From positions 1-51,171 of the forward strand of contig JAPDFW010000098.1 in the NCBI GenBank assembly GCA_028826165.1: DNA of 51,171 nt, read 5' to 3'. Below, in pieces: positions 2,061 through 22,100 of the stretch (its first letter is position 1; each line of letters starts with the position of its first letter). Under the pieces are notes generated by a model, which saw only the letters and a list, made by a program, of their open reading frames with translations, was not told where the DNA came from and searched no databases. Position numbers and translations under genes: made by a program. Source of the stretch: Anaeramoeba ignava BMAN (taxonomy: Eukaryota > Protista > Anaeramoebae).

Positions 2061-2351
2061 TTTTAATTTCGGTTAAAAAAAAATAAAAAAAAAAAAAAAA
2101 ATAAAAATGAAAAAAAAAAATGAAAAAAAAAAAATGGCAAAAAGAAGAATACTCTTTTTATTTTAATTTATTTTAATTTATTTTTAAAAAAAATTGAAAG
2201 GAAAAATTTAATTTTCTCTCTTTTTTTTCTTCTTTTCTTTTCTTTTCTTTTCTTAATTTTAAAGTGAGAACAGAATTAGAAAAAAATAAAATTAATTTTT
2301 TCATTTTTTCATTTTTTCATTTTTTCATTTTTTTTAATTAATTATTTGGAA

Positions 2352-5300
2352 ATGAATAATTCTAAAATTTTTCCTTCAACTTCTCATCAACTTAGACTTT
2401 TTATTGATTATAAATTAAATCCAAATACTTCTAAATATAATCTTTCATGGATAATTGATATAAATGGAAAATTTAATTTAGAAAGTTTTCAAAAAAGTTG
2501 GATTTATTTAATTCAAAACCAAGAATCATTTAGAACAACTTTTAAAGAAGAAAATGATAAAATTTATCAAATTATTCATCCTAAAAATATAGAAATTCCA
2601 ATTGAAATTATTAATTTAAAGCAAAATAAAAACCCAAAAAAATCAATTAACAAAATTGTCAAATCAAAAATTTATAATCATTTTAATTTGGAAAACTTCC
2701 CTTTATGTTCTTGTTCTATTATTCAATTCAACCAAAATCAATTTAAAATTGTTTTTTGTTTTCATCATATTATCATTGATGGTTATTCAATAGATTTATT
2801 TTTCAATAATTTATCTCTTCTTTATTCTCATTTCAAATCAGATCCAAAATCTCAAAATATTGAATTAAATTTAGATTCTAAAAGAAATCTTTATTCTCAT
2901 TTCAAACCATATCCAAAATCCCAAAATATTGAATTAAATTTAGATTCTAAAAGAAATACAATGGAAGATTATCTAAAATTTGAAGAAAAACTTTTGCAAA
3001 ATTCCAGTAAAATTGAATCAGCAGAAAATTACTGGAAAGATGTTTTCAAGGATTCTTCTCTTGAATTAAAAATTCCAACATGCTATCATTACAACAAAGA
3101 CTCCTTTACAGAATCTGCAAAACGGATTTATTTTCATATCAACAAACAAGAAATGCTTTCAATAGAAAATTTTATTAAACAATACAAAACAACTTTATTC
3201 ATCTATTTAGTATCCGTTTTCCAAGTTTTACTCTTTAAATTTTCAAAACAAAAAACAATTACAATTGGTTATTCAAGTGGGATGTTTTATAGGAAAATTT
3301 TCCCTAATTTGATTGGATTTTTTGTTAATAATCTTCCTTTAAAATCAAAATTCAAAAAAGATTTGTCGTTTCTTCATCTTCTCTCTCAAAATCAAAACAT
3401 GAGAACTCAAACAAAAGAATTTGAATGGTTACCTTTATCAGAAATAATCAAACTACTTAGAAAGGATGAAAATTTTGTTCAAATTAACGCAACAAATTTA
3501 TTTCCTGTTTCTTTTTCAGCAACAAATTTTGCTATGAATGTAAAATTTGAAGATGTTGAAACCAAATCATATCCTGGAGAAATTGCAGAAATTATGAACA
3601 AACTTTCATTTATTTATGAAAAACAAAATGATTCCATTTGTTTTGGTGTGGAATATAACACTTCAATATTTTCTTTAGACTTTATCAATCAACTAATTAC
3701 TTATTACTGTAAATTGATTTCAAGCACTTCACAAAATCCAAATTTACTAGTTTCTGAATATTTATCAACATTTGATGATTCAATTCATCCAAATTTTGAT
3801 TATTCAACAAATTTATCTCAAAATCAATTTTTTATTTTTCAAAAATTTGAAGCTCAAGTCCAAAAACAACCTGATTCAATTGCTTTAATTTATCAAAATC
3901 AATCGATAACCTACAAAAACTTGAATAAAATATCAAATAAATTGGCTCATTTTTTAAGAGATTATTGCCAAGTAAAACCAAATACTTTTGTTGGGATTTG
4001 TCTTGATCGCTCATTTGAATTGATAATTGCAATTTTAAGTGTTTTAAAATCAGGAGCATGTTATGTTGCATTAGATCCTATATATCCCCAAGAAAGACTT
4101 AATTATTTTATCAAAGACACAAAAATTAATACAATTTTAACTTTTGAAAAATATTCCAATTTAATACCAAATTCAGTAAATTACATAATTTTTTTGGATA
4201 ATTTTTATAGAAATGGAAATGGAAATTTTTCTATTAAAATATCAGAAAATTCCCAAAAAAAGAAGAAAGTACAACTCTCTCACATCAGTAAAGATAATCC
4301 AAAAATATGTAATGAACTTAGTGATTTGGCTTATATTATTTACACCTCTGGATCAACTGGAGAACCAAAAGGAGTCATGATTTCACATTCAAATTTATCA
4401 TATAGAATTGACAGTTTACTTACAGCATATTGCATTAATCAAGACGAACAAGAAAGAGAGAAAGAAATATTTCTTCATCAAACATCACATAGTTTTGATA
4501 CTTCAATTGAAGAAATTTTCATTCCATTAACAACAGGAGGAGAAGTTGTGATTCTTCCCCAATCAAAATTTAGAGATATCAACTTAATTTTTGATTTAAT
4601 TTGGCAACATTCAATTACAACAGTAAGCTTTGTTCCATCTTTACTGGAAATTTTCCTGAAATATTTTTTGGAAAATAAAGATGCTTATAGATTAGCATTT
4701 CCTTTGAAAAGAATAATTTCTGGTGGAGAAGAATTGAAAAGAAATGTTGTGGATCTTTATTTTGATTTGAAACTAAATTCAATTAAATTATTCAATAGTT
4801 ATGGACCAACAGAAACAACAATTATTGTTACATCATATAAAATTGACTCAAAATTGGAAAGGAATGAAAAAATACTTATTGGGAAAACTATCCCTCACAC
4901 TTCCATTTATATTCTTGATTCAAAATTAAATCTTGTTCCTATTTTTGCTCCTGGTGAAATTTATATTTCAGGAAAATGTGTTTCTCAAGGTTATATCAAC
5001 AAAGAAGAGCTTACCAAAAAGAAATTCATTCCAAATCCTTTTTCGAAAGATGATTCAAATAAGATTTTATATCGAACAGGAGATCAAGGAAGATTTATGA
5101 AAAATGGAGGAATTGAATTTTTGGGAAGAGTTGATAATCAAATTAAATTAAGAGGAATTAGGATTGAATTGGTGGAAATTGAAAAAGTATTAAATAAACA
5201 TCCAAATATCGTTAATTCAGTTGTTTGTTTATCAAAAGAAAAACAAATTTTGGTTGCTTTTATTATTTATTCTCAAGATTCACAAAAAATAGAAAATCAA

Positions 5301-8300
5301 GAAATATTTTTGGAAAGGAAAAAAAACATTTTAAATTATTTGAAACCAAAATTACATCAAGCAATGATTCCTTCAATTATGATATTTCTTGATTCATTTC
5401 CTTTAACTGTTGGAAAGAAAATTGATAGAGGGAAATTAATGAAGATGGCTCAAGATCCAAAATATTTAAAATTTTCCAAAAATGAAGAATTAAATGATGA
5501 AAAAGAAGAATTCAAACCAAGAAATGAAATTGAAAAACAAATTGAAAACATTTGGAAAGATATTTTACACATTGATAATTGCAAAATTAATGATAACTTC
5601 TTTTCTTTGGGAGGACACTCTTTATCAGTTCTTCTATTTGCATCAAGAATTAGAAATATTTTCCAAATCAATTTACCAATAGATCTTATATTCCGATTCC
5701 CAACTATTATGGAAATTTCAGACTTGATTAAAAATTTTAAAAACCAAAATTTTGAAGATGAAATATTTATGATTGAAAAATTTCCAAATGTAGAATCACC
5801 TTATCCTTTATCATTTGCTCAAGAGAGATTACTTTTTCTTGAGGAATTATCACCAGGAAATTATAATATCTCAATACCAATAAAATTAAATGGTGAATTA
5901 GATATTGAAGCTTTAGAATATTCATTTACTAAATTGTTAAAATTATATCCCATTTTTGGATCCAGAATTTTGATGAAAAATGATAACTATTACCAAGAAT
6001 TTATTGAAAATAGAAATTTCCAAATTGAGAGAAGTGTAATTTCCTCAAAAGAAGTTGATCAAATTATTCGAAAAGAATCAAGCAAACATTTTGATTTATT
6101 CAACGATTTTCTATATAGAGTTAAATTATTTTGCATTATTGATAATGAAAATGAAAAACAAAATATAGATAATTGTGGAAGTTGTCATTATGGTCATAAC
6201 CATCTACTTTTAATTTGTGTTCATCATATTATTTTTGATGGATTTTCTCATGATATCATGAATAAGAAAATATCCTCATTTTATAATTATTATATTGAAA
6301 ACAAGGAGAAAAAAGGGATTGTATCTGAAGAAGAATTGAATGAAATAAATCATAACTTAAATTATATTGATTTTATTCTCTCTCAAAAAAATTGGTTCAA
6401 ATCAGAAAAAATGAACAAATATTTTGAATATTGGAAACAAAAATTAAGTGGATCTTCTTTCCATCTTAATTTACCATTTGATTTCCCAAGAAAAACAAAA
6501 CAAAGTTTCAAGGGTTCCTATTATGAATTTGGAATTGATCAAGTATTATTCAAAAAATTGAAAAATTTTGCAGAAAAAAATAACACAACAATGTTTGTAG
6601 TTATGCTATCAGTTTTCCAAATATTATTATATAGATATTCTAATCAAAATGATATTATTGTTGGAGTTCCATTTTCATCAAGACATTATTCAGGATCAGA
6701 AAATATTATTGGATTGTTTGTAAATTCAATTCCAATAATAACAAAATTTGATAAGCATACAAATCAGAGTTTCAATTCTTTTTTAAGAGAAATTCAAAAA
6801 ACACATGAAGAAGCGCATAAATATCAAGATTTACCTTTTGATAAAATTGTGAAACTACTAAATATTGCACATAATCCTTCACATAATCCCCTTTTCCAAG
6901 TTATGTTTTCATATGAACATTTAAAAGATGGAAGTGTATTTAATTTAAAAAATGTGAAATCCCAAGAAATTTACAATGTTGATTATCAAAGTTCCAAATT
7001 TGATTTATCATTAGAATGCCAAGAAATAAATCATGAATCTCAAAATAAAGAAGATATCACGTTCACTTTTGAATATTGTGTGGATTTATTCAGAAAAGAA
7101 ACAATTATACAAATGGCAAATAATTTGACAAATTTAATTGAATATATTGTGAAAAATGAAGGAAATGAATCAATATTTTTTATTCCATTACTTTCAGAAA
7201 AGGAAAAAGAAAAAATACTATATACTTTTAATTATAAAAAGCTAAACAAAGAAAAGAAAGAAAAAATATTTGCTGAAGATGAAAAACTCTTACATAAAAT
7301 TTTTGAAAAGATTACTAAAGAAAAACCCAAAAATATTGCATTGAATTATCTTGGGAAGGAAATTACTTATCAACAATTAAATGAAAATTCTAATCAATTT
7401 GCAGTTTATTTGATAAACAAATATAAAATTATCCCAAATTCTTTGATTGCTATTGGGATACAACGTTCAATACCACTTATAATAGCAATTATTGGAATTC
7501 TCAAAGCAGGTTGTTGTTTTTTACCTATTGATGTTAATTTACCACAAGAATCATTGATAAATATTATAAAGGATTCAGAGTGTAAATCAATTATTATCAA
7601 TGAAGAAACAAAATCCAAATTCTCATTTTTTGAAGGAAATTTTATCGATATTGATTCAAATGATATTTGGGAGCAAAAAGAAAATATTAATTATGAGGAA
7701 ATACTGCAAAAAATAGAAATAGATGGGAAAAGTTTAGCTTATGTTATTTATACATCTGGAACATCAGGAAAACCCAAAGGAGTTATGATCCAACACCAAG
7801 CAATAACTTTAAGATTATTATCTGCACAAAAACTTTGTCAACTTAATGAAAAAGATAAAATGCTTAATTACACAACAATCGGCTTTGATATTTCTATTGA
7901 AGAGATATTTTGGCCACTTATAGTTGGTGGAACTGTTGTTATTGGAGCAGAAAATATTCATTTTGATATTCCTCAACTTTTGGAAATTATCTCATCTACA
8001 AAAGTTTCTGTGATTGACTTTGTTCCTTCTTATCTTCAAGTATTTCTAGAGAATCACAACATTTTCAAAGATAAGTTGAAACCTTTAAGGATTGTAATTT
8101 GTGGAGGAGAAGCACTTAAATACGATATTATGAACAAGTTTTTCAAAATATTTCCTGAAAATGTTTCATTTTATAATGCTTATGGACCAACAGAAATTAC
8201 GATTGATGCAAGTTATTGGAAATGTGACAAGAATTCGGATCGAGTTTTTATTGGGAAACCTTTAGCAAAAACTTATTTATATATTTTAGATCAATTTTTA

Positions 8301-10394
8301 CAACCTGTTCCTATTGGTGTTTGGGGTAAATAATAATTAAATAATAATTAAAAATTTATCTAAAAATTTATTTAAAATTTAAAATCAAAAGGTCAATTAT
8401 TTGTTGGAGGAATTGGATTGTCTAAAGGATATCTAAATAATCCAGATTTAACAAAGAAGAAATTCATTGCAAATCCTTTTAGTAAAAATTCTGAGAAAAG
8501 ATTATATAAAACTGGAGATATTGTGCGATTTAATCATGAAGGAAATGTTGAATTTTTTGGAAGAAAAGATTCTCAAATAAAATTAAGAGGATATAGAATT
8601 GAAATATCAGGAATTGAATCAATTATTCAAGAGTTTCCATATGTTTCACAAGCAGCAATTAAAATGTTTTCTTTTAATGAAAATGATTATAATTCTTGCT
8701 ATTTAACTGCTTATATTGTTACCAAAAAACCAGAAATTTTGGAAAAAGAAAAATTGATTGAAGAATTGAAGAAATTTGTTTCAAATAAACTTCCTAAATA
8801 TATGATTCCAAGTTTTTATGTAATTTTGAATGAATTACCACTAAATCAAAATGGGAAGATTGAATACAATTTATTGGAAAAACCCAAAATTAATGAAAAG
8901 GAAATTGTGAAAATTGAACAAGAAATTTTGGGAGAAATGGAAAAGAAAATGATTTCAATTTGGCAAAAAATCTTGGGAATTGAGGAAATATCTTTTGATA
9001 GTAATTTTTTTGAACTTGGAGGGAATTCATTGATCTTATTAAGTTTACAATCAAAAATTGATATGGAAATGAAAGAGAAAATACCAATTAACCAATTCTT
9101 TATCAATCAAACACCAAGAAAATTGGTTGAATACATTAATTCTATTCATAATATTCAAAATTTAGAAAGTGAAATTATTACCAATAAAGAAAATAATGAA
9201 AATTTTGGAGATTCAACAATAAAAAAGTTAATTTCTGAAGATTTAAAATTTGAATTGGAGAAAATTGATTTGAAATTTGATTTGGAAAAATTGAAGAATC
9301 CAGATGGTATTTTCTTAACAGGAGCAACAGGATTTCTTGGCTCATTTTTATTATTTGATTTATTAAAACAATTTGAACAACAAAAAACACCAATTTATTG
9401 TTTAGTTAGAGCAAATGAGAATGAAAATGGAAAACAAAAAATTGAAAGAATAATGAAAGAAAATTTGATTTGGAAAGAAGAATTTAAAGAAAGAATTATA
9501 GCAATAGAAGGAGATTTATCCAAAACAAATCTTGGAATGGAAGAAAATGAATTCAACGAATTATCCAAAAAAGTATCATTAATATATCATTGTGGAGCAA
9601 TTGTCAATTTTATTTATCCTTATGAAAAAGTGAGGAATACAAATATCCTTTCAACAAAAGAAATCATCAAGTTATCGTGTTTGAATCAATTAAAAACAAT
9701 CAATTATATATCAACAATTTCTGTTTTAGAATTTTATGAGGAAGATTATGAAGAAATTGATGAAACATTTCCATTGTATATTCACAATAATCTTTATTCA
9801 AGTGATGGTTATACACAAACAAAAACCGTTTCTGAATTGCTGATTTTGAAAGCAAAGGAAAAGGGGATTCCAATTAAAATTTACAGACCATCAAGAATTA
9901 TGGGAGATTCTTTAAATAATTGTTATAACGAAAAAGATTTCCTTGTTAATTTTATAAAGGGAGTTTATCATATGAAAATTACTCCTGATATAGATTTATT
10001 AGAAGATTGTTTACCTGTTGATTATGTTTCTCAATCAATTGTTTCTTTATCTATTCAACCTGATTTATTTGGTCAAGTTTTCCATTTATTTAATTCTCAA
10101 AAAATTTCTTGGAATGAAATTATCTCAATTATGAATTCAAATTCTCTTCAAGTTTCTACTCTTTCTTATAAGGAATGGAGGAAATGTTTTGTTAATTCAA
10201 AAGATGATGATTTAAATCCACTTTCTAATTTTTGGTTTTTATTTGATGAAAATGGAGATTTTTTTAAGAATAGAAGAGAGAATTTTAAATATTTAAATAA
10301 GAAAACCAATTTAAAAATTGAATATTTAATTAATTCTTTAAAAGATCTAAAAGAATTATTTACTTTTTATTTAAATTCGATGAAATTAAATTAA
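2352..10394 (+). CDS. Bimodular nonribosomal peptide synthetase C-A-T-C-A-T-R (terminal thioester reductase); exons 2352-8325 and 8392-10394, 2658 aa
   Basis: C1 HHIIIDG (2763). A1 YTSGSTGEPKG (4341), FDTS, SGGE, NSYGPTETT, YRTGD, QIKLRGIRIE. T1 FFSLGGHSL (Ser at 5619). C2 HHIIFDG (6222). A2 YTSGTSGKPKG (7749), CGGE, NAYGPTE, YKTGD, NGK. T2 FFELGGNSL (Ser at 9027). R domain TGATGFLG (9318), YISTIS, YTQTK (YxxxK), RPSRI. The ATG is at 2352 (the ORF track uses TTG 2346). Splicing 8326-8391 joins the two ORFs in frame (7977 nt total). Confidence 0.97.
2820..2957 (+). repeat. 69-bp (23-aa) in-frame tandem duplication inside the NRPS C1 domain
   Basis: LYSHFKSDPKSQNIELNLDSKRN / LYSHFKPYPKSQNIELNLDSKRN; copies at 2820-2888 and 2889-2957, nearly identical in DNA. 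Confidence 0.95.
8326..8391 (+). other. 66-nt phase-1 spliceosomal intron in the NRPS A2 domain
   Basis: TGGG|gtaaataat...aaaatcaaaag|GTCAA. It contains in-frame stops, and its removal restores the A6 core motif PIGVW-G-QLFVGGIGLSKGY. Confidence 0.95.
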
Positions 10395-10583: not shown

Positions 10584-13046
10584 ATGAATAAAATTCAAGA
10601 AGTTTGGTCTTTTAATTTAGAAAAAGAAATACGTAATATTTGTGATATTGTAGAAGATTATCCATATATTGGAATGGTATAACAAAAAATAAACTAAAAA
10701 AATTAATTAAACAAAAAAATTAATTAAAATAAAAATTAAATTATTTAACAAAAGGATACAGAATTTCCTGGAGTTGTTAAACCAAGTTATCAAAAAGTTC
10801 CAATAAATACAATTGAAACTTCTTATAAAACAATAAGAGAAAATGTTAATATTTTAAAGATCATTCAAATAGGATTAACATTTTCTAATGAAAACGGAGA
10901 GTTACCCCCAAATATTTCAACTTGGCAATTTAATTTTCATTTTGATTTAGAGTAAATTTTTAGATCAACAATTAAAATTAAAATTCATTTATAAAATTAA
11001 AATTCATTTATAAAATTAAAATTCATTTACAAAATTAGTATTAATATTATAATTAAAATTAAAATTCATTTACAAAATTAAAATTAAAATTAAAATTAAA
11101 ATTAAAATTAAAATTAAAATTAATATTAAAATTAAAATTAAAATTAAAATTAAAATTAAAATTAAAATTAAAATTAATTTACAAAATTAAAATTAAAATT
11201 AAAATTAAATTTAAATTTAAATTTAATTAAAATTAAAATTAAAATTAAAATTAAAATTAAATTAAATTTAAAATTAAAATTAATTATTAATAGAATTAAA
11301 ATTAAAATTAAAATTAAAATTAAAAATTAAAATTAAAATTAAAATTAAAATTAAAATTAAAATTATTAAAATTAATATTAAAATTAAAATTAAAATTAAA
11401 ATTCATTTATAAAATTAAAATTAAAATTAAAAATAAAATTAAAAAAGAAATGATCCTTATGCAAAAGATAGTATCAATTTATTAAAAAATTCTGGGTTAA
11501 ATTTTCAAAGACATTTAAATGAAGGAATTAAATCAACCGATTTTGCTGAGTTAATTATGACAAGTGGAGTTGTTTTATCGGATTCAGTTAAATGGATTAC
11601 TTATCATAGTGGATTTGATTTTGGATATTTTTTAAGATTATTATCGAATCTAGATTTACAACCAGAAAGAGATAGTTTTATTGAAGATTTATCTTATTAT
11701 TTTCCTGTTATTTATGATTTAAAATATATTTCAAAATCTATAGGAAATTTTCATGGAGGATTACAAGATTTAGCAGATTATTTTCAAGTAAAAATCAATC
11801 AAGAAAGACATTTTAAACATAATTTAAAATTAAATTAAAATTAAAAAATTAAATTTAAAATAAAATTAAAATTAAAATCAAAATCAAAATCAAAATCAAA
11901 ATCAAAATCAAAATCAAAATGAAAATCAAAATCAAAATCAAAATCAAAATAAAAATCAAAATCAAAATAAAAATCAAAATCAAAATCAAAATAAAAATCA
12001 AAATGAAAATCAAAATCAAAATGAAAATCAAAATCAAAATCAAAATCAAAATCAAAATCAAAATCAAAATGAAAATCAAAATGAAAATCAAAATCAAAAT
12101 CAAAATGAAAATCAAAATGAAAATCAAAATCAAAATCAAAATGAAAATGAAAATGAAAATGAAAATGAAAATGAAAATGAAAATGAAAATGAAAATTAAA
12201 ATCAAAATTAAAATCAAAATCAAAATCAAAATCAAAATGAAAATTAAAATCAAAATCAAAATTAAAATCAAAATGAAAATGAAAATTAAAATCAAAATCA
12301 AAATAAAAATCAAAATTAAAATCAAAATCAAAATCAAAATAAAAATCAAAATAAAAATCAAAATAAAAATTAAAATCAAAATCAAAATCAAAATCAAAAT
12401 TAAAATGGAAATCAAAATCAAAATCAAAATCAAAATAAAAATGAAAATGAAAATGAAAATAAAAATGAAAATCAAAATGAAAATAAAAATGAAAATGAAA
12501 ATGAAAATTTAAATCAAAATGAAAAATAAAAATTAAAATAAATGAAAAATATGTTGTGGATTAAATTTATTTATCAAAAAAAAAAATAATTATTATTTTC
12601 CTTTTTCAAAAAAAAAGGTTCCAAGAATTGGTCAAAAACATCAAGCAGGAAGTGATAGTTTAATAACTAATTCCTTATTTTTTGCCTTAAAAAAACATTT
12701 GAATGGATTCATTTCTGAAAATTTTAATGGGAAAATTTTTGGATTATTTGAAGATCCTCAACAAAAAATTCCAAATCAAAATTTAAATCAAAATCCAATT
12801 CCAAATCAAAATTCAAATCAAATTCAAATTCCAAATCAAAACATAAATCAAAATATAAATCAAAATATAAATCAAAATCAAATTGAAAATCTTAAAGAAA
12901 TGAATCAAAAAAAAAATTATCCGGCTTTAAATCAATTAAAAGGAAAAGATTATAATTCTCAATTTATTTCTTATTCAAATTATGCTCAAAATCAATTTAT
13001 GAACGAATATGAAATTAATGATCATTTTTTTGTTCAAACAAATTAA
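10584..13046 (+). CDS. CAF1: CCR4-NOT deadenylase subunit CAF1/POP2 (CNOT7/8 family, DEDD nuclease); exons 10584-10676, 10755-10951, 11448-11787, 12618-13046
   Basis: Spliced protein [15 protein letters not shown]...YPYIGM|DTEFPGVV...IIQIGLTF...TWQFNF...[12 protein letters not shown]...[12 protein letters not shown]...YDLKY...HGGLQDLA...[12 protein letters not shown]. All catalytic motifs are present, the three GT-AG introns keep frame, and there is an N/Q-rich tail. Confidence 0.95.
10952..11447 (+). repeat. CAF1 intron 2 filled with (AAAATT)n microsatellite
   Basis: Direct reading; GT at 10952, AG at 11446-11447. Confidence 0.9.
11788..12617 (+). repeat. CAF1 intron 3 filled with (AAAATC/AAAATG)n microsatellite
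   Basis: Direct reading; accounts for the spurious KIKIKI/ILILIL ORFs. Confidence 0.9.
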
Positions 13047-13233
13047 AAAAAAAAATTAATTAAAATTAATTAAAATTTATTTTTTTTTTTAAAAACAAAA
13101 CAAAACAAAACAAAACAATAAAAATCGGAAAAAAAAAATTTATTTGAAATTTTCTCTAAAGAGAATTGTAAATTGTTTTTTAAAAAAAAAATGAAAAAGA
13201 AAAGTAATTTTTTTGAGTTAAATTTTTTTGAAA

Positions 13234-16200
13234 TCATTTTTTTTCTTTTTTTGTTTCTTGTTTAATTTTCTTTCTTTCTTGTTTTTCTTTTAATCTTTCT
13301 TCTTTTTTCTTTTGATAATATTCAATAAAAGTTTTTCTCATTTGTTGTTTTTCTAATTCTTTTGATTTTGATTTATCAATTGTTGGTTCTTTTTGAATTT
13401 GAGGTTTATCTCTTAAATCATTCATTTTTTTTTCTGCATCTTCTTGAATTTTCTTTTTGTCAGATTCAGAAAGAATTTCAATTCTTGGTCTCCAACAAGC
13501 AAATTTTAAACCTTCTGGATGAATTGTTTTAATTAAAGCACCTTGGAAAGTATAAAATTGAATTTCTCGATTGTTCTAATTTTTAATATTAATATTAATT
13601 TTAATTTTAAATTTATAAATGAATTTTAATATTAAATTAATTTTAATTTTAAATTGAATTTTAATTTTATAAATTAAATGAATTTTAATTTAATATTAAT
13701 TTTAATTTTAATTTTAATTTTAATTTTAATTTTAATTTTATAAATTAAATGAATTTTAATTTTATTTTTAATATTAATTTTAATTTTAATTTTAATATTA
13801 AATTAATTTTAATTTTTAATATTAAATTAATTTTAATTTGAATTTTAATTTTAATTTTATAAATTAAATTGAATTTTTAATTTTATTTTTAATATTAATT
13901 TTAATTTCAAATTTAATATTAATTTTAATTTTAATTTTAATTTTAAATTTATAAATGAATTTTAATTTTAATTTTATAAATTAAATGAATATTAATTTTA
14001 TAATTTTAATTTTATAAATTAAATGAATTTTAATTTTATTTTTAATATTAATTTTAATTTTAATTTTATAAATTAAATGAATTTTAATTTTATTATTAAT
14101 ATTAATTTTAATTTTAATTTTATAAATTAAATGAATTTTAATTTTAAAATGAATTTTAATTTTATAAATTGAATTTTAATTTGTACTTCTGAAAAAATCA
14201 TAAGGAAACTTCCAGTTGGATCCCAAAATCCTCGAGTATATGAAGGTAAATCAACAATAGAACTCTTAGTAAAATTTGAACTATCCCAAAACTCCATAAC
14301 ATAAGAATAACCTTTTTTAACCACAACAATAAAATATCTACCTTTTGAACTCCATACAATATCTCTCAATTGAATATCAGGAATAGTTTTCAAAACTTCA
14401 ACTTTGTTTTGATTCACATCATTCGTTAATTGAGCATGACCTTGTGTTGTATACATGCGGATTGTTTGTAGTTTTGCTTCATTTTGTGATTTCACTTCAG
14501 CTGGTTCGGTTGCAAATATAAAAGTGGATCCCTCTGGATCCCATTCAAAATTACTGATCAAAAAGCTTTTGAAGTCAATTGTTTCATGAAGAATTTCTTT
14601 TGAATTTAAATTGAATAATTCCACTGATGATCCTGATATTGATTTTAATGTTTTTGAGTATTTTGTAACAATAACAGCAACATGGTTTCCTTTTGGATGC
14701 CAAAAAATTTCACAATCTTCAACAAGAACAAGATTGTGTGATTTCACTATTTGTAAAGAAGGAATTTCCATGAAGACAATCTTTGATAAATTGGCGCTAT
14801 CTGTTGCTTTTGTCCAGTAAACTAACAAATTTTCTTTTGGTGAAAAGGATATTTCTTGAATGTTTGGAATAGGAATTGGATGCTTTGGATTCGAATCTAA
14901 AGATGGTATATCATAGAATTGTATTTGGTCAAGATTCAAACGAGCAAATTTTGTCCCGTCAAAATTCCATGCAAATCCATTATAAATGTCTGTTGAATGT
15001 ATTAAAGCTTTTGGTGATTTCGATTCGATTTTTTGCAATTCTATTCTTTCATTTATTAATTTTCGAAGATCTGTTTTATCTATCTTAGTTTTTGGCTCCT
15101 TTTTATCTTTTTTTCGGTTTTGCTTTTTGATTTGTCCGATTCTATCTGTTTCTCTTTGGATTTCTTCTTCTAAAACTTCTAATTCTTTTGGGGTTCGAAA
15201 AAATTGATTGTTTTTTTATCTTTTGATACATTTTCTGGTAATTGAATTTTTGGAATTTTGAATTTTCTTTTTCTATTATCAATCCATAAATCCCAAACAA
15301 CGGAAGCGTCTCTATTTTACATGAAAAATATATTTATATTTATATTTATATTTATATTTTATATTTATATTTATATTTATATTTATATTTATATTTATAT
15401 TTATATTTATATTTATATTTATATTTATATTTATATTTATATTTATATTTATATTTATATTTATATTTATATTTATATTTATATTTATATTTATATTTTA
15501 TATTTTATATTTATATTTTATATTTATGTTTATATTTATGTTTATATTTATATTTTTATTTATATTTATATTTATATTTATTTATATTTATATTTATATT
15601 TATATTTATATTTATATTTTATTTATATTTATTTATGTTTTATATTTTATATTTTATGTTTATTTATATTTATATTTATATTTATATTTATGTTTTATAT
15701 TTATGTTTATGTTTTATTATATTTATATTTATATTTATATTTATATTTTATTTTTTATGTTTATATTTTATGTTTTATATGTTTATATTTTATTTTTTTT
15801 ATGTTTTTTTTTTATGTTTATATTTATGTTTATATTTATATTTATATTTATGTTTATATTTTTATGTTTATAATTTTATTTTATATTTATATTTATATTT
15901 ATATTTATATTTATATTTATATTTATATTTATATTTATATTTTATATTTATATTTTATGTTTATGTTTATATTTTTTATTTTTGTATTTTTATGTTTATA
16001 TTTTATATTTTTATTTATGTTTATGTTTATATTTTATATTTATATTTATATTTATATTTTTATATTTATGTTTATGTTTATATTTATATTTATATTTATT
16101 TAATATTTTATATTTATATTTATATTTTATGTTTATTTTTTATTTATATTTTTATATTTATATTTTATATTTTATATTATTTATATTTATATTTATATTT

Positions 16201-18786
16201 ATATTTATATTTATATTTATATTTATATTTTTATATTTATATTTTTATTTTATTTTATAATTAGTTTTATTTTATATTTATATTTATATTTATATTTATA
16301 TTTATATTTATATTTATATTTATATTTATATTTATATTTATATTTATATTTATATTATATTTATATTTATATTTATATTTATATTTATATTTATATTTAT
16401 ATTTATATTTATATTTATATTTATATTTATATTTATATTTATATTTTATTTTTATATTTATTTTTATTTTTATTTTTATTTATTTTTATTTTTATTTTTG
16501 AAATTACTTTGAATGTGTTATTAAAAATCTTTCATTTGGACAAAATTGAAAAGTTTTGATATTATCATGTCTCAATGATTGAAAACGTCCCCATTCTTTT
16601 CCACAATATGCATCTAAAGATGAAACTCCAGTTATTGTTAAAAATAACCCATGAGGAGACCATTCTGTTCGACGACCTGAAGTCTATTAGATATTATTAA
16701 ACAATCAAAAATTATTTTAAATTATTTCAATTTATTTAAATTATTTCAATTATTTCAATTTATTTCAAATTATTTTAAATTATTTTAAATTATTTCAAAT
16801 TATTTCAATTATTTCAAATTATTTCAAATTATTTTAAATTATTTTAAATTATTTCAAATTATTTTAAATTATTTTAAATTATTATCTCAAAAAAATACCT
16901 TCAATTCAAAATCCATTTCATCATCTTCTTGAGCAAAATCACACCACATAACAGAAGCAGTTAAATTTGTTGCAATAACATATTGATCTCTTAAATTAGG
17001 ATCTAAAAGCCAATATAAGAGATCATAATCATCTTTTAATGAATAATCTTTTTTAGGAAGTTCATCAGGAAATTCTTCAACAGTTTTTAAATATTCAAAT
17101 GAATAAATTTCAAATGTATGTTGTTTATCAAATGGTTTGTTATGTAGTTTTTTTGTCATCAATTCTGCTGTTTCTTTATCTTCAAAACTTACAAAACAAT
17201 ATCCTTTTGTTTTATTCGCTTCTTTATCAAATGGAACACTCAAATATTTTATTTTGTATTTCCCAGCCTAAATATTTAATTTTAATATTAATTTTAATAA
17301 ATGAATTTTAATTTTAATTTTAATTTTAATTTTAATTTTAATTTTAATTTTAATTTTAATTTTAATTTTAATTTTAATTTTAATTTTAATTTTAATTTTA
17401 ATTTTAATTTTAATTTTAATTTTAATTTTAATTTTAATTTTAATTTTAATTTTAATTTTTAATTTTAAATTTTAATTTTAATTTTAATTTTAATAAATTT
17501 TAATTTTAATTTTAATTTTAATTTTAATTTTAATTTTAATTTTAATTTTAATTTTAATAAATAAATTTTAATTTTAATTTTAATTTTAATTTTAATTTTA
17601 ATTTTAATTTTAATTTTAATTTTAATTTTAATTTTAATTTTAATTTTAATTTTAATTTTAATTTTTAATTTTAATTTTAAATTTTTTTAATAAATTACTT
17701 CAGAAAAGGTTTTTTCAAGAACTTTTTTTAATAATTCCAATTTTTGTCCACCAATTATTGGTATATTCTTTACTATAATATCACTATCATAAGAAAGCTC
17801 TGGATTTGGTGTTGGTAATTCTTCATATTCCTTAATTAATTCTTCTTTTTCTTTTTCTTTCTTTTTAATTTCTTCTTCTAATTTATTAAAACTTTCAAGT
17901 TGTTCCCAAATTTTATCTCTTTCAGCTTTTTTTGCGTTCATTTTTTCTACTAATAGTTTCACTTCATCAACTTTTTCTTTTTCTTTTTCTTTTATTTCAT
18001 TAATTTGATTTTCTATTTGAGTTTTTTCATCTTTTTTTTCATCTTTTATTTCATCTTTTTTTTCATCTTTTTTTTCATCTTGTTTTTCATCTTGTTTTTC
18101 ATCTTGTTTTTCATCTTGTTTTTCATCTTGTTTTTCATCTTGTTTTTCATCTTGTTTTTCATCTTGTTTTTCATCTTTTATTTCAACTTTCTTTTCATCT
18201 TTTTTTTCATCTTTTTTTTCATCTTTTTTTTCATCTTTTTTTTCATCTTTTTTTTCATCTTTTTTTTCATCTTGTTTTTCAGCTTTTCATCTTGTTTTTC
18301 ATCTTTTTTTTTTTCATCTTTTTTTTCATCTTGTTTTTCATCTTTCATTTGTTTTTTTGGTTGATTATTTTGTTTTTTTGGTTGATTATTTTGTTTTTGA
18401 TTTTGATTTTGATTTTGATTTTTTGGTTTATTTTTTTGATTTTGATTTTGTTTTTGATTTTGTTTTTGATTTTGTTTTTTGGGTTGATTTTTTTGATTTT
18501 CATTTGTTTCTTGATTTTGATTTTCATTTATTTCTTGTTTTGGATTTTCATTTGTTTCTTGTTTTGGATTTTCATTTGTTTCTTGTTTTGGTTTTTCATT
18601 TGTTTCTTGATTTTGATTTTGATTTTGATTTTGATTTTGTTTTTGTTTTTGTTTTTGTTGCTGTCTTTGTTTTTGTTTTTGATTTTGATTTTGTTTTTGT
18701 CTTTGTTTTTGTTTTTTTTTTTGATTTTGTTTTTGTTTTTGTTTTTGATTTTGTTTTCCTTTCTGTGATTTATTTGTTAGTGACAT
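13234..18786 (-). CDS. eIF3b: Eukaryotic translation initiation factor 3 subunit B (PRT1); exons ~18786-17699, 17267-16899, 16683-16509, 15311-14187, 13575-13234; two apparent 1-nt frameshifts (~18285, ~15200)
   Basis: RRM ([10 protein letters not shown]...[10 protein letters not shown]...KPFDKQHTF), the [12 protein letters not shown] motif, WD/beta-propeller repeats ([41 protein letters not shown]) and the C-terminal WRPR motif. The long low-complexity QNQK/DEKK N-terminal extension makes the start less certain. Confidence 0.9.
13576..14186 (-). repeat. eIF3b intron with (AAAATT)n-type repeats on the sense strand
   Basis: Direct reading; GT at 14186, AG ending at 13576. Confidence 0.85.
15312..16508 (-). 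repeat. eIF3b ~1.2-kb intron with (ATAAAT)n microsatellite on the sense strand
   Basis: (TTTATA)n on the plus strand; accounts for the IYIY/LYLY ORFs. Confidence 0.9.
17268..17698 (-). repeat. eIF3b intron with near-perfect (AAAATT)n on the sense strand
   Basis: (TTTTAA)n on the plus strand, between GT at 17698 and AG ending at 17268. Confidence 0.9.
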
Positions 18787-18929
18787 TGTTTTTTATTCAA
18801 AAATTAATCAAAAAATTTTTTTTTAATTCTAAATTTTTTGTTTTTGAATTAAAAATGAAAAATTTTTCTTTTTTTTTTATTTATTAATAATTTTTTTGAA
18901 ATAATTAGTAATATTATTTCTATTTTTAC

Positions 18930-21900
18930 TCATTTATTTCAAAATATTCTTTATTCCTTATTTTAAATTAAATTAATTAAATATTATTATTCAATTTTTA
19001 TTCCAATTTTTATAAAATATTATTAATAATTTTATAAATTAATTATTATTTATTCAAATTTTTAATCAAAATATTAAATTGATTAAATTTAAAAATAAAT
19101 AAAAAATTTCTTATTTTTTTATTAAATTAATTTATTATTATTAAATATTTATTAAATTTTAATAAAATATTATTAATAATTTTATAAATTAATTATTATT
19201 TATTCCATTTTTAATCAAAATATTAAATAGATTAAATTTATTAAATATAAATAAATATTCTTTATTCCTTATTTTAAATTAAATTAATTAAATATTATTA
19301 TTAAATATTTATCTAAATTTTAATAAAATATTATTAATAATTTTATAAATTAATTATTATTTATTTCAAATTTTTAATCAAAATATTAAATTGATTAAAT
19401 TTATTAAATATAAATAAATATTCTTTATTCCTTATTTTAAATTAAATTAATTAAATATTATTATTCAATTTTTATCTTAATTTTAATAAAATATTATTAA
19501 TAATTTTATAAATTAATTATTATTTATTTCAATTTTTAATCAAAATATTAAATTGATTAAATTTATTAAATATAAATAAATATTCTTTTATTCTTTATTT
19601 TAAATTAATTTTAATTAAATATTATTAATAAATATTTATCTTAATTTTTATAAAATATTATTAATAATTTTATAAATTAATTATTATTTATTTCAATTTT
19701 TAATCAAAATATTAAATTGATTAAATTTATTAAATTTAAATAAATAATATTCTTTATTTCTTTTTTAAATTAAATTTATTAATAAATATTTATTAAATTT
19801 TAATAAAATATTATTAATAATTTTATAAATTAATTATTATTTATTTCAATTTTTAATCAAAATATTAAATTAGATTAAATTTTTAAATATAAATTAATTA
19901 TTCTTTATTTCCTTATTTTAAATTAATTTTTAAATAAATATTTATTATTAAATATTTATTCCAATTTTAATAAAATTTATTAAAATTAAATAAATTAATT
20001 ATTATTTATTCCATTTTTAATCAAAATATTAAATTGATTAAATTTATTAAATTTAAATAAATATTCTTTATTTCTTATTTTAAATTAAATTAATTAAATA
20101 TTATTATTAAATATTTATTCCAATTTTAATAAAATATTAATTTTATAAATTAATTATTATTTATTCAAATTTTTAATCAAAATATTAAATTGATTAAATT
20201 TATTAAATATAAATAAATATTCTTTTATTTCTTATTTTAAATTAATTTAATTAAATATTATTATTAAATATTTATTCCAATTTTAATAAAATATTATTAA
20301 TAATTTTATAAATTAATTATTATTTATTTCAAATTTTTAATCAAAATATTAAATTGATTAAATTTATTAAATATAAATAAATATTCTTTATTTCTTATTT
20401 TAAATTAATTTAATTAAATATTATTATTCAATTTTTATCTAAATTTTAATAAAATATTATTAATAATTTTATAAATTAATTATTATTTATTTCAAATTTT
20501 TAATCAAAATATTAAATTGATTAAATTTATTAAATAAATAAATATTCTTTATTTCTTATTTTTATATTAAATTAATAAATTAAATATTATTATTAAATAT
20601 TTATTCCAATTTTAATAAAATATTATTAATAATTTTATAAATTAATTATTATTTATTTCAAATTTTTAATCAAAATATTAAATAGATTAAATTTATTAAA
20701 TATAAATGTCAATTTTTATTCTTATTTTAAATTGAATTAATTAAATATTATTAATAAATATTTATCTAAATTTTAATAAAATATTATTAATAATTTTATA
20801 AATTAATTATTATTTATTTCAAATTTTTAATCAAAATATTAAATAGATTAAATTTATTAAATATAAATAATTATTCTTTATTCCTTATTTTAAATTAAAT
20901 TAATTAAATATTATTAATAAATATTTATCTAAATTTTAATAAAATATTATTAATAATTTTATAAATTAATTATTATTTATCCCAATTTTTAATCAAAATA
21001 TTAAATTGATTAAATTTATTAAATATAAATAAATATTCTTTATTTCTTATTTTAAATTAATTTAATTAAATATTATTAATAAATATTTATCTTAATTTTA
21101 ATAAAATATTATTAATAATTTTATAAATTAATTATTATTTATTTCAAATTTTTAATCAAAATATTAAATAGATTAAATTTATTAAATATAAATAAATATT
21201 CTTTATTTCTTATTTTAAATTAATTTAATTAAATATTATTATTAAATATTTATCTAAATTTTAATAAAATATTATTAATAATTTTATAAATTAATTATTA
21301 TTTATTTCAATTTTTAATCAAAATATTAAATTGATTAAATTTATTAAATTTAAATAAATATTCTTTTATTCCTTATTTTTAAATTAATTTAATTAAATAT
21401 TATTATTAAATATTTATCTTAATTTTTAATAAAATATTATTAAAGTTTTATAAATTAATTATTATTTATTTCAATTTTTAATCAAAATATTAAATTGATT
21501 AAATTTATTAAATATAAATAAATATTCTTTATTTCTTATTTTAAATTAAATTAATTAAATATTATTATTAAATATTTATCTCAATTTTAATAAAATATTA
21601 TTAATAATTTTATAAATTAATTATTATTTATTTCATTTTTAATCAAAATATTAAATAGATTAAATTTATTAAATATAAATAAATATTCTTTATTTCTTAT
21701 TTTAAATTAATTTAATTAAATATTATTATTAAATTTTTATCTTAATTTTAATAAAAATATTATTAATAATTTTATAAATTAATTATTATTTATTTCAATT
21801 TTTTAATCAAAATATTAAATTGATTAAATTTATTAAATTTAAATAAATATTCTTTATTTCTTATTTTAAATTAATTTAATTAAATATTATTATTAAATAT

Positions 21901-22100
21901 TTATCTCAATTTTTATAAAATATTATTAATAATTTTATAAATTAATTATTATTTATTCAAATTTTTAATCAAAATATTAAATTGATTAAATTTATTAAAT
22001 ATAAATAAATATTCTTTATTCTTTTATTTTAAATTAAATTAATTAAATGTTATTATTAAATATTTATCTTAATTTTAATAAAATATTATTAAAGTTTTAT
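18930..22100. repeat. Tandem satellite array, ~162-bp unit, ~19-20 copies, extremely AT-rich
   Basis: Anchor AATCAAAATATTAAA recurs at about 19064, 19213, 19376, 19538, 19702, 19855, 20019, 20175, 20339, 20502, 20668, 20829, 20991, 21154, 21316, 21480, 21641, 21805, 21967. Confidence 0.93.

What the first reader, a model, noticed from the sequence alone, without database searches (positions are those of the whole stretch)
4497..8215. Adenylation pockets predict two basic residues (Lys-like then Arg-like): candidate X-Lys-argininal protease inhibitor
Seen: aligning by eye to the GrsA-PheA core motifs gives 10-residue codes of about DTESIGSIIK for A1 (FDTSIE / TTVSFVP / IISGGE / NSYGPTETTII) and DIEDIGAIDK for A2 (FDISIE / SVIDFVP / VICGGE / NAYGPTEITID). 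Known: Glu/Asp at positions 239 and 278 typify pockets for basic amino acids. From memory, A1 resembles Lys codes of the DAESIGSV type and A2 resembles Arg codes of the DxEDIGAI type. Inferred: with the R domain the product would end in argininal, the warhead of leupeptin and antipain. That would inhibit trypsin-, papain-, clostripain- or kexin-like proteases, and might modulate digestion of prey or symbionts, or serve in defence.
Basis: partly seen in the sequence, partly recalled or inferred. Interest (0 to 1): 0.85.

Follow-up and report, generated by a model that had tools for sequence, protein, structure and literature searches.

The report
Amoeba NRPS predicted to make Lys-argininal
An anaerobic amoeba (Anaeramoeba ignava) carries an intact bacterial-type peptide-making enzyme whose two substrate pockets match those for lysine and arginine; it ends in a reductase, so it most likely makes a small capped Lys-Arg aldehyde of the leupeptin kind, but the product is so far only a prediction from sequence.

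Summary
The window is a whole contig of Anaeramoeba ignava. It carries one gene (2352-10394, one 66-bp GT..AG intron) encoding a C-A-T-C-A-T-R NRPS with all catalytic motifs intact.

- **Pocket codes.** The same extraction returns published codes for other families.
- **A2.** It is 8/10 identical to two Arg codes in published substrate-labelled tables and fits the Arg consensus at 9 of 10 positions.
- **A1.** It is 8/10 identical to a Lys code and 7/10 to three more. The best Arg code is 6/10.
- **Reductase.** It passes the thioester-reductase cut-off. Its relatives include a probable SpuB synthetase, from a strain that makes argininal peptides. Its best solved relative, MxaA, is an alcohol-former as I recall it.
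- **Unresolved.** Aldehyde versus alcohol, the role of the N-terminal C domain, and expression.
- **New here.** A 98.7%-identical paralog on another contig differs at 5 of 18 pocket positions (p about 5e-5), including E239K in A1. Its frame is broken in A2.
- **Prior knowledge.** The genome paper mentions NRPS genes only in passing.

This is a new member of a known kind in an unusual host.

The parts
2352..8325 (+). Exon 1 of the NRPS gene. It starts at ATG 2352 and ends in phase 1. It encodes C1-A1-T1-C2 and the N-terminal two thirds of A2.
   Evidence: Open frame 2346-8333. Pfam domains. The public model of the paralog starts at the same Met.
8326..8391 (+). Intron of 66 bp, GTAAAT...AG. Removing it restores the A-domain stretch GVWG|QLFVGGIGLSKGY.
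   Evidence: Read directly from the sequence. The public model P0001 of the paralog has the same junction. The intron is conserved in the C47 copy. No RNA reads could be obtained.
8392..10394 (+). Exon 2: the C-terminal subdomain of A2, then T2 and R. The stop codon is at 10392-10394.
   Evidence: ORF 8418-10394 in the same frame as 8394. Pfam and NCBIfam hits.
2352..3770 (+). C1, the N-terminal condensation domain. The active-site motif HHIIIDG starts at 2763. Its subtype (starter or elongation) is unresolved.
   Evidence: Pfam Condensation stretches. Motif position. Subtype tests were inconclusive.
2819..2957 (+). In-frame 69-bp tandem duplication (2 copies, 23 aa each) inserted in C1 just after the HHxxxDG motif.
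   Evidence: Tandem Repeats Finder: period 69, 2.0 copies, 95% matches. The Pfam match to C1 is split at this point.
3846..5420 (+). A1 adenylation domain with code DTESIGSIIK (residues at nt 4497-4826, K517 at 5418). Predicted substrate L-Lys.
   Evidence: Pfam residues 501-883 and 944-1022. TIGR01733 at 395.5 bits against a cut-off of 317.4. Code. Labelled Lys codes.
5538..5729 (+). T1 carrier domain. The GGHS motif starts at 5610 and the attachment Ser is at 5619.
   Evidence: Pfam PP-binding at residues 1065-1128. Motif position.
5796..7220 (+). C2 condensation domain with HHIIFDG at 6222. It has typical elongation-type similarity, 30-34% identity to bacterial C domains.
   Evidence: Pfam residues 1151-1625. 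BLAST against retrieved NRPSs.
7365..8858 (+). A2 adenylation domain, interrupted by the intron at 8326-8391. Code DIEDIGAIDK (nt 7887-8207, K517 at 8856). Predicted substrate L-Arg.
   Evidence: TIGR01733 hits on both exon pieces. Code. Arg consensus and labelled codes.
8949..9137 (+). T2 carrier domain. The GGNS motif starts at 9018.
   Evidence: Pfam PP-binding. Motif position.
9309..10274 (+). R, the terminal thioester reductase. The NAD(P)H motif GATGFLG is at 9321, STISV at 9711 and the catalytic YTQTK at 9810.
   Evidence: TIGR01746 at 279.7 bits against a cut-off of 213.35. Pfam NAD_binding_4 at 210.7 bits. Best PDB match MxaA at 225 bits. Motif positions.

Best explanation
The gene at 2352-10394 encodes an intact two-module NRPS of bacterial type, now resident in the nuclear genome of Anaeramoeba ignava.

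Shown: the domain order C-A-T-C-A-T-R, intact catalytic motifs in every domain, and an Sfp/AASDHPPT-type phosphopantetheinyl transferase elsewhere in the genome.

Inferred from pocket codes: A1 loads L-lysine onto T1 and A2 loads L-arginine onto T2. C2 then joins them into T2-bound Lys-Arg.

Inferred from position only: C1, which has nothing upstream of it in the protein, caps the lysine alpha-amine with an acyl group taken from an acyl-CoA or a carrier protein.

Inferred from family membership: the terminal reductase uses NAD(P)H to cleave the thioester and releases (acyl-)Lys-argininal. That is a peptide aldehyde with a leupeptin-like warhead. It would form a covalent hemiacetal or hemithioacetal in serine or cysteine proteases that accept Arg at P1 and Lys at P2, such as trypsin-like, cathepsin-like or kexin/furin-like enzymes. 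A second reduction to the inert alcohol cannot be excluded.
For: - **Architecture and motifs:**
- **Intron and start codon:** they agree with the public model of the paralog.
- **A2 as Arg:** it fits the Arg consensus at 9 of 10 positions and is 8/10 identical to three labelled Arg codes.
- **A1 as Lys:** it is 8/10 identical to Lys DAESIGTIIK, and every labelled code at 7/10 or better is Lys.
- **Extraction method:** validated on published codes.
- **Reductase:** over the TIGR01746 cut-off. Among its relatives is P0276 of Nostoc sp. CENA543. The pocket codes of P0276's three modules fit Hty, Ile/Val and Arg, and the strain's pseudospumigins end in argininal.
- **Bacterial look-alikes:** C-A-T-C-A-T-R relatives with a Pro code followed by DTESIG[ST]VV before the R domain exist.
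- **Selection:** dN/dS of 0.35-0.45 between the two copies shows purifying selection.
- **Host context:** a PPTase is present. The neighbouring genes are eukaryotic, namely BEACH, PP4R3, F-box and ankyrin.
Against:
- **Reductase:** its best solved relative is MxaA at 225 bits, which as I recall reduces to an alcohol. The aldehyde-forming AusA R scores only 54 bits.
- **C1:** it shows no special similarity to known starter C domains. It is about 22-27% identical to N-terminal and internal C domains alike.
- **A2:** its A10 motif reads NGKIEY instead of the usual NGKxDR.
- **Distance:** nothing characterised is more than about 33% identical over the modules or about 42% over R, so codes learned on bacteria may transfer imperfectly.
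- **Context:** no tailoring, transport or acyl-supplying gene lies next to the gene.
Confidence: 0.5

Rival explanations
1. Same enzyme and substrates, but the reductase carries out two successive reductions. The product is then (acyl-)Lys-argininol, an alcohol with no protease-reactive warhead.
For: The best solved relative of the R domain is MxaA of myxalamid biosynthesis (225 bits), an alcohol-former as I recall it. MxcG-type relatives also give further-reduced products by my own knowledge.
Against: R-domain sequence does not reliably separate 2-electron from 4-electron enzymes (own knowledge). Another relative is P0276, probably SpuB of Nostoc CENA543, a strain in which argininol variants were 'practically absent'. 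The Anaeramoeba R domain sits on a long branch with no supported sister.
Confidence: 0.2
2. C1 does not acylate. The free dipeptide aldehyde Lys-Arg-H is released and cyclises through its alpha-amine to a dihydropyrazinone or pyrazinone, as with the aureusimines and the gut-bacterial dipeptide aldehydes.
For: The C1 subtype is unresolved. C1 carries a 46-aa duplicated insert next to its active site. No acyl-activating partner is adjacent. Pieces of the protein align with the AusA model, though far below its cut-off.
Against: The HHIIIDG motif of C1 is intact. Between the paralogs C1 has dN/dS 0.41, so it is under constraint. An N-terminal C domain with no job would be expected to decay.
Confidence: 0.12
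3. One or both pockets take a related but different substrate: ornithine, homoarginine, hydroxylysine, or a bispecific Arg/Tyr choice at A1. The product would then not be Lys-Arg.
For: DVESIGGVTK serves both Arg and homoarginine, and DIESIGTIVK serves beta-OH-Lys or Lys. ApnA A1 genotypes with E239 and S278 take Arg plus Tyr. A1 matched ApnA A1 more strongly than most other solved A domains (319.7 bits).
Against: All labelled codes at 7/10 or better to A1 are Lys, and all at 8/10 to A2 are Arg. The best Orn codes reach only about 6/10 to A2.
Confidence: 0.13
4. The gene is a silent relic of lateral transfer and makes no product.
For: There is no expression evidence. The sister copy on C47 has a broken frame. 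No relative closer than about 33% identity turned up in the protein collection, none of them from another Anaeramoeba.
Against: The coding sequence of 7974 nt is uninterrupted apart from one clean intron, in very AT-rich DNA. All catalytic motifs are intact. dN/dS is 0.35-0.45. The coding region is 98.7% identical between the copies against 91% upstream.
Confidence: 0.05

Closest known systems
Spumigin / pseudospumigin synthetase SpuB (Nodularia, Nostoc sp. CENA543)
   Same: An NRPS whose last module activates Arg and is followed directly by a thioester reductase that releases an argininal-ended trypsin inhibitor. P0276 of Nostoc sp. CENA543, probably this SpuB, is 32% identical over the T-R region, aligned over 99% of it.
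   Different: It is bacterial and has three modules (Hty, Pro or Ile, Arg). It is primed by a separate SpuA with a hydroxy acid. Its Arg code is DVETTGAVT, a different subtype from DIEDIGAID. It has no Lys at P2.
Gut-Clostridia dipeptide-aldehyde NRPSs and ruminopeptin
   Same: The same C-A-T-C-A-T-R layout. Products are N-acyl or free dipeptide aldehydes that inhibit proteases or cyclise to pyrazinones.
   Different: Their residues are hydrophobic or Glu rather than dibasic. They are bacterial. No close sequence relationship was seen: all hits are at or below about 33% identity.
Leupeptin (Ac-Leu-Leu-argininal)
   Same: An N-capped short peptide ending in argininal. The structure is quoted in PMC5640712.
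   Different: P2 and P3 are Leu. By my own knowledge it is made in gammaproteobacteria by discrete ligases, not by a modular NRPS.
MxcG (myxochelin) and MxcG-like C-A-T-R proteins
   Same: A Lys-type pocket (DAEDIGTVVK) next to a terminal R domain. The NCBIfam MxcG model aligns to exon 2 with 312.8 bits.
   Different: That score is far below the MxcG cut-off of 2300. MxcG has one module, acylates both Lys amines with dihydroxybenzoate and makes a siderophore.
AusA (aureusimine synthetase)
   Same: A two-module NRPS with a terminal R domain that releases a dipeptide aldehyde. NF047350 aligns piecewise.
   Different: AusA lacks the N-terminal C domain and uses Val and Tyr or Phe. All scores (75-465 bits) are far below its cut-off of 2500, and the AusA R domain is a weak match (54 bits).
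MxaA terminal reductase (PDB 4U7W)
   Same: The best solved relative of the R domain (225 bits).
   Different: It belongs to a PKS-NRPS line and, by my own knowledge, reduces all the way to a primary alcohol.

Membership tests
Modular (type I) NRPS | Condensation domains with the HHxxxDG active site | tested here: met
   HHIIIDG at nt 2763 and HHIIFDG at 6222. Pfam Condensation 454 bits.
Modular (type I) NRPS | Amino-acid adenylation domains with D235 and K517 and the core motifs | tested here: met
   A1 scores 395.5 bits on TIGR01733, over the cut-off of 317.4. A2, searched as two exon pieces, scores 244.6 and 116.1 bits, each below the cut-off. D235 and K517 are present in both. The A10 motif of A2 is atypical (NGKIEY).
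Modular (type I) NRPS | Carrier domains with the GGxS serine, and a PPTase to load them | tested here: met
   GGHS at 5610 and GGNS at 9018. An AASDHPPT_N+ACPS protein of 266 aa lies at G000:C113.
Terminal thioester reductase (TIGR01746) | Score over the curated cut-off, a GxxGxxG nucleotide motif and the Thr/Tyr/Lys triad | tested here: met
   279.7 bits against 213.35. GATGFLG, STISV and YTQTK are present.
Arg-activating A domains | Code consensus D-[AV]-E-D-[IVL]-G-A-[VI]-[TD]-K (PMC12283262) | tested here: met
   A2 DIEDIGAIDK fits 9 of 10 positions, with Ile at 236. It is 8/10 identical to WbpA, to PedH/PvdI and to ApnA Arg codes. Enzymatic activation cannot be tested with these tools.
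Lys-activating A domains | Code of the D-x-E-[SD]-I-G-[ST]-[IV]-[IVC]-K type | tested here: met
   A1 DTESIGSIIK is 8/10 identical to DAESIGTIIK (SesC/TaaE). It is 7/10 to the BacB, CphC and PaxB/C codes. The best Arg code is 6/10.
Peptide-aldehyde protease-inhibitor pathways | Release stops at the aldehyde (2-electron reduction) | not testable with these tools
   The relatives include P0276, probably SpuB, from a strain whose peptides end in argininal, and MxaA, alcohol-forming as I recall it. The tree gives no supported sister.
Peptide-aldehyde protease-inhibitor pathways | Product detected and shown to inhibit a protease | not testable with these tools
   There are no chemical data. RNA runs could not be reached.
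Starter (lipoinitiation) C domain | N-terminal position with no upstream module in the protein | tested here: met
   The gene starts at 2352 directly with C1.
Starter (lipoinitiation) C domain | Groups by sequence with known starter C domains | tested here: inconclusive
   Best hits are 22-27% identical and mix N-terminal docking-type and internal C domains. PDB hits are headed by the TycC PCP-C structure. The 1.84-billion-protein search was dominated by multi-domain sums.
AusA / MxcG / Lys2 equivalogs (NCBIfam) | Whole-protein score over the equivalog cut-off | tested here: not met
   NF047350 gives at most 465 bits against 2500. NF038078 gives 313 against 2300. TIGR03443 gives 343 against 1030. 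The matches are domain-level homology only.

The most novel reading that the evidence does not exclude
The C99 and C47 genes are a young duplicate pair in which selection, or a recombination tract, has rewritten the substrate pockets: E239K, S278N and S322G in A1, and I236V and D278E in A2. The amoeba would then make, or recently made, a small set of argininal peptides differing at P2. It would use these host-encoded metabolites to control proteases of its prey or of the sulfate-reducing bacteria in its symbiosome. That is the role the genome paper only guessed at for its NRPS genes.
Probability: 0.12. Interest if true: 0.8.

Novelty: new member of a known kind. Interest (0 to 1): 0.55.

Why it matters
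NRPS genes are rare in protists, and almost none has a predicted product. Here the prediction is concrete: a capped Lys-Arg aldehyde, whose dibasic Lys-Arg end matches the classic recognition site of kexin/furin-type and trypsin-type proteases. It can be tested with standard adenylation assays and with carbonyl-directed LC-MS on an organism that is already in culture.

The Anaeramoeba genome paper raised, without analysis, the idea that host NRPS products influence which bacteria colonise the symbiosome (PMC11550330). This gene gives that idea a specific molecule to look for.

The paralog pair, with pocket-focused divergence, offers a small natural experiment in how A-domain specificity changes after duplication in a eukaryote.

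Tried and rejected
- **RNA evidence.** Expression and splicing rest on sequence logic and on the public model of the paralog.
- **Alignment to GrsA (1AMU).** Five near-identical LgrA entries filled the alignment slots each time. I relied instead on motif anchors and on a column extraction validated against published codes.
- **Text searches for exact or near-exact code strings.** These gave only two useful papers at first. A later search found the code-table paper.
- **Subtype of C1.** The HMMER scan of 1.84 billion proteins ranked giant synthetases by summed domains and was uninformative. BLAST against 238 retrieved NRPSs and the PDB search did not separate starter from elongation type.
- **Donor lineage.** Top hits are mostly cyanobacterial but at most 33% identical over the modules and about 37-42% over R. 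A maximum-likelihood run did not finish. FastTree puts the two Anaeramoeba R domains on a branch of 1.3 substitutions per site, and support for the nearest sister is 0.54. I name no donor.
- **Haplotig reading of C47.** Rejected. Homology stops about 40 bp after the stop codon, and the rest of the two contigs shares only simple repeats.
- **Earlier findings of this scan.** Nothing was on record.
- **Supplement of the genome paper.** It did not list this gene in the text that is held.
- **Spliced protein.** They were searched apart by reference. The stored public protein P0001, which is the paralog's model, served for the R-region search.

Full report
**What is there.** The window is a complete 51,171-bp contig (G000:C99) of a 42.8-Mb assembly. 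Its G+C content is 4-35% in 2-kb windows. The best protein match names the organism: a 2629-aa hypothetical protein of Anaeramoeba ignava, P0001, is 96% identical.

A frame of 1995 codons (2346-8333) is followed after 84 bases by a frame of 658 codons (8418-10394) on the same strand. The gap holds a 66-bp intron, 8326-8391, GTAAAT...AG, in phase 1. Removing it joins ...PIGVWG to QLFVGGIGLSKGY..., the normal continuation of an adenylation domain. The public model of the sister copy has the same junction and the same start Met.

Each exon was searched by reference.

**Domains.** Pfam and NCBIfam give C-A-T-C-A-T-R. Every catalytic signature is intact:
- HHIIIDG and HHIIFDG in the two C domains.
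- The GGHS and GGNS carrier serines.
- D235 and K517 in both A domains.
- GATGFLG, STISV and YTQTK in the reductase.

The reductase exceeds the curated thioester-reductase cut-off (TIGR01746, 279.7 bits against 213.35). The genome also encodes one Sfp/AASDHPPT-type phosphopantetheinyl transferase.

The other genes on the contig are plainly eukaryotic: a BEACH/neurobeachin protein, PP4R3, an F-box protein and ankyrin-repeat proteins. The NRPS is therefore part of the amoeba's genome, not a bacterial contaminant.

**The observation.** Anchoring on FDxS, xxPS, xGGE, NxYGPTE and the A10 Lys gives DTESIGSIIK for A1 and DIEDIGAIDK for A2, with coordinates. The finding's start, 4497, is exactly the D235 codon of A1.

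I repeated the extraction by reading the corresponding columns of MAFFT alignments of several hundred A-domain segments cut from database homologues. The same columns return three codes that a published table lists for the same families: PaxB/C Lys DTSDIGSVI, MxcG Lys DAEDIGTVV and Pro DVQFIAHVV. They also return DILQLGLIW, the Gly code as I know it. This validates the register.

**What the codes predict.** A 2025 survey of 2051 bacterial A domains gives substrate-labelled tables in GrsA numbering (PMC12283262).
- **A2.** The survey states that most Arg domains share D235, A/V236, E239, D278, I/V/L299, G301, A322, V/I330, T/D331 and K517. A2 matches at every position but 236, where it has Ile. 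Its nearest labelled codes are all Arg, each at 8/10: DTEDIGAVDK (WbpA) and DAEDIGAITK (PedH, PvdI), and the Arg-only ApnA A1 genotype DVEDIGAIEK of Planktothrix (PMC5311044). The best Orn codes reach about 6/10.
- **A1.** The nearest labelled codes are all Lys. DAESIGTIIK (SesC, TaaE) is 8/10. DAESIGSVCK (BacB), DAEDIGTIIK (CphC), DIESIGTIVK (Odl4, Lys or beta-OH-Lys) and DTSDIGSVIK (PaxB/C) are each 7/10. The best Arg code, DVESIGGVTK, is 6/10.

In short, A2 has the acidic residue at 331 that the Arg consensus allows, and A1 has the hydrophobic 331 seen in most of the listed Lys codes. I put A2 = Arg at about 0.8 and A1 = Lys at about 0.65. The main alternatives are close analogues (homoarginine, hydroxylysine, Orn) or a looser Arg/Tyr-type pocket like some ApnA genotypes.

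**Release step.** The R domain has no close relative. The best are about 37-42% identical and mostly cyanobacterial. In a FastTree the two Anaeramoeba copies sit on a long branch without a supported sister.

Two relatives are informative, and they point in opposite directions.
- P0276 of Nostoc sp. CENA543 has three modules whose codes fit Hty, Ile/Val and Arg, followed by R. This matches pseudospumigin (Hpla-Hty-Ile-argininal) from that strain, in which argininol forms were practically absent (PMC5640712).
- The best solved relative is the MxaA reductase (225 bits). From my own knowledge it reduces to an alcohol.

Sequence alone does not settle aldehyde against alcohol. I favour the aldehyde at roughly 3:1. 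It is the obligatory first product, and a basic P1 residue placed next to an R domain recurs in relatives.

**The N-terminal C domain.** C1 has an intact active site and is under constraint (dN/dS 0.41). It carries an in-frame 69-bp tandem duplication just after the active-site motif. It is only 22-27% identical to any C domain I retrieved, and equally so to N-terminal docking-type and internal ones. PDB and billion-protein searches did not place it.

By position it should cap the Lys alpha-amine with an acyl group, which would keep the aldehyde from cyclising. That is an inference. If C1 does nothing, the free dipeptide aldehyde would probably cyclise to a pyrazinone.

**A second copy.** G000:C47 holds the same gene in reverse orientation (12096-1725). 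The coding sequence is 98.7% identical, the upstream region 91%, and homology stops about 40 bp after the stop codon. The rest of the two contigs shares only simple repeats, so this is a duplication and not a haplotig.

Overall dN/dS is 0.35-0.45. Amino-acid changes pile up in the pockets, however.
- A1 becomes DTKNIGGIIK (E239K, S278N, S322G).
- A2 becomes DVEEIGAIDK, which is 9/10 identical to the Arg code of HynA.
- Five of 18 variable code positions differ, against 64 of 2657 residues overall (hypergeometric p = 4.7e-5).
- The A4-A5 stretch of A1 has dN 0.035 against 0.010 for the gene, while the 210 residues before it have no replacement at all. Synonymous change is also raised there, so a recombination tract is as possible as positive selection.

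As assembled, the C47 copy has two separate 1-bp insertions, 21 bases apart, just before the A4 motif of A2. They break the frame. The public model P0001 hides this by splicing out 29 residues that include the FDxS motif. Whether these insertions are real needs reads.

**Context in the literature.** The Anaeramoeba genome paper notes 'several non-ribosomal peptide synthases' among laterally acquired genes. It suggests their products might influence which bacteria colonise the symbiosome, without further analysis (PMC11550330). I found no paper that treats this gene, its codes or its product.

**Verdict.** The enzyme is a new member of a known kind, a reductase-terminated dimodular NRPS of the peptide-aldehyde type, in an unusual host. 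The product structure, its oxidation state, its N-cap and any role in digestion, defence or symbiont control remain predictions.

Noticed in passing
G000:C47:1725-12096 (minus strand; loci L013-L014): A paralog of the whole gene, 98.7% identical in coding sequence. Its pocket codes are changed: A1 DTKNIGGIIK and A2 DVEEIGAIDK. Two separate 1-bp insertions, opposite window 7844 and 7865, break the frame just before the A4 motif of A2.
   Followed up: yes
Protein P0001 (public model M0811_14704 of the C47 copy): The annotated protein skips 29 residues, including the FDxS motif with D235 of A2. This looks like an artificial intron placed to bridge the two frameshifts. As annotated, its second A domain would be dead.
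   Followed up: partly
G000:C114:77056-82965(-), C101:201427-207381(-), C59:500147-504505(+), C68:187453-194487(+), C115:399717-406985(+), C8:64215-70850(-): Six further NRPS-like genes, each one long open frame. Four of the five checked with Pfam have AMP-binding, PP-binding, two or more Condensation stretches and a C-terminal pleckstrin-homology (PH) domain (64-71 bits). The fifth (C59) shows PP-binding, Condensation and PH but no AMP-binding hit. C8 was not scanned. The usual HHxxxDG and A3 motifs were not found by pattern. An NRPS fused to a PH domain is an odd, eukaryote-style architecture.
   Followed up: partly
window 2819-2957: An in-frame 69-bp tandem duplication (two 23-aa copies) sits inside the first condensation domain, right after its active-site motif. 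It is present in both paralogs.
   Followed up: no
window 10970-22100: About 11 kb of almost pure simple repeats follows the gene: hexamer arrays AATTAA, TTTTAA, TATATT and TTTAAT, then a 163-bp satellite of about 20 copies at 18942-22100. G+C falls to 4.4% there. The hexamer arrays also match arrays on C47.
   Followed up: no
window 22108-24288 (-): A 727-aa protein with a membrane Acyl_transf_3 domain (110 bits), 12 kb downstream of the NRPS. No link to the NRPS was tested.
   Followed up: no
G000:C113:7147-7944 (+) (L019:1186-1983): The only phosphopantetheinyl transferase found in the genome: 266 aa, AASDHPPT_N plus ACPS domains (Sfp/Lys5 type). It is the likely activator of all the carrier domains.
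   Followed up: partly
Proteins P0280, P0284, P0356 (metagenomic, unnamed): Bacterial C-A-T-C-A-T-R proteins of about 2530 aa with a Pro code followed by DTESIG[ST]VV, a Lys-like code close to A1 here, directly before the reductase. These may make capped Pro-Lys aldehydes.
   Followed up: no
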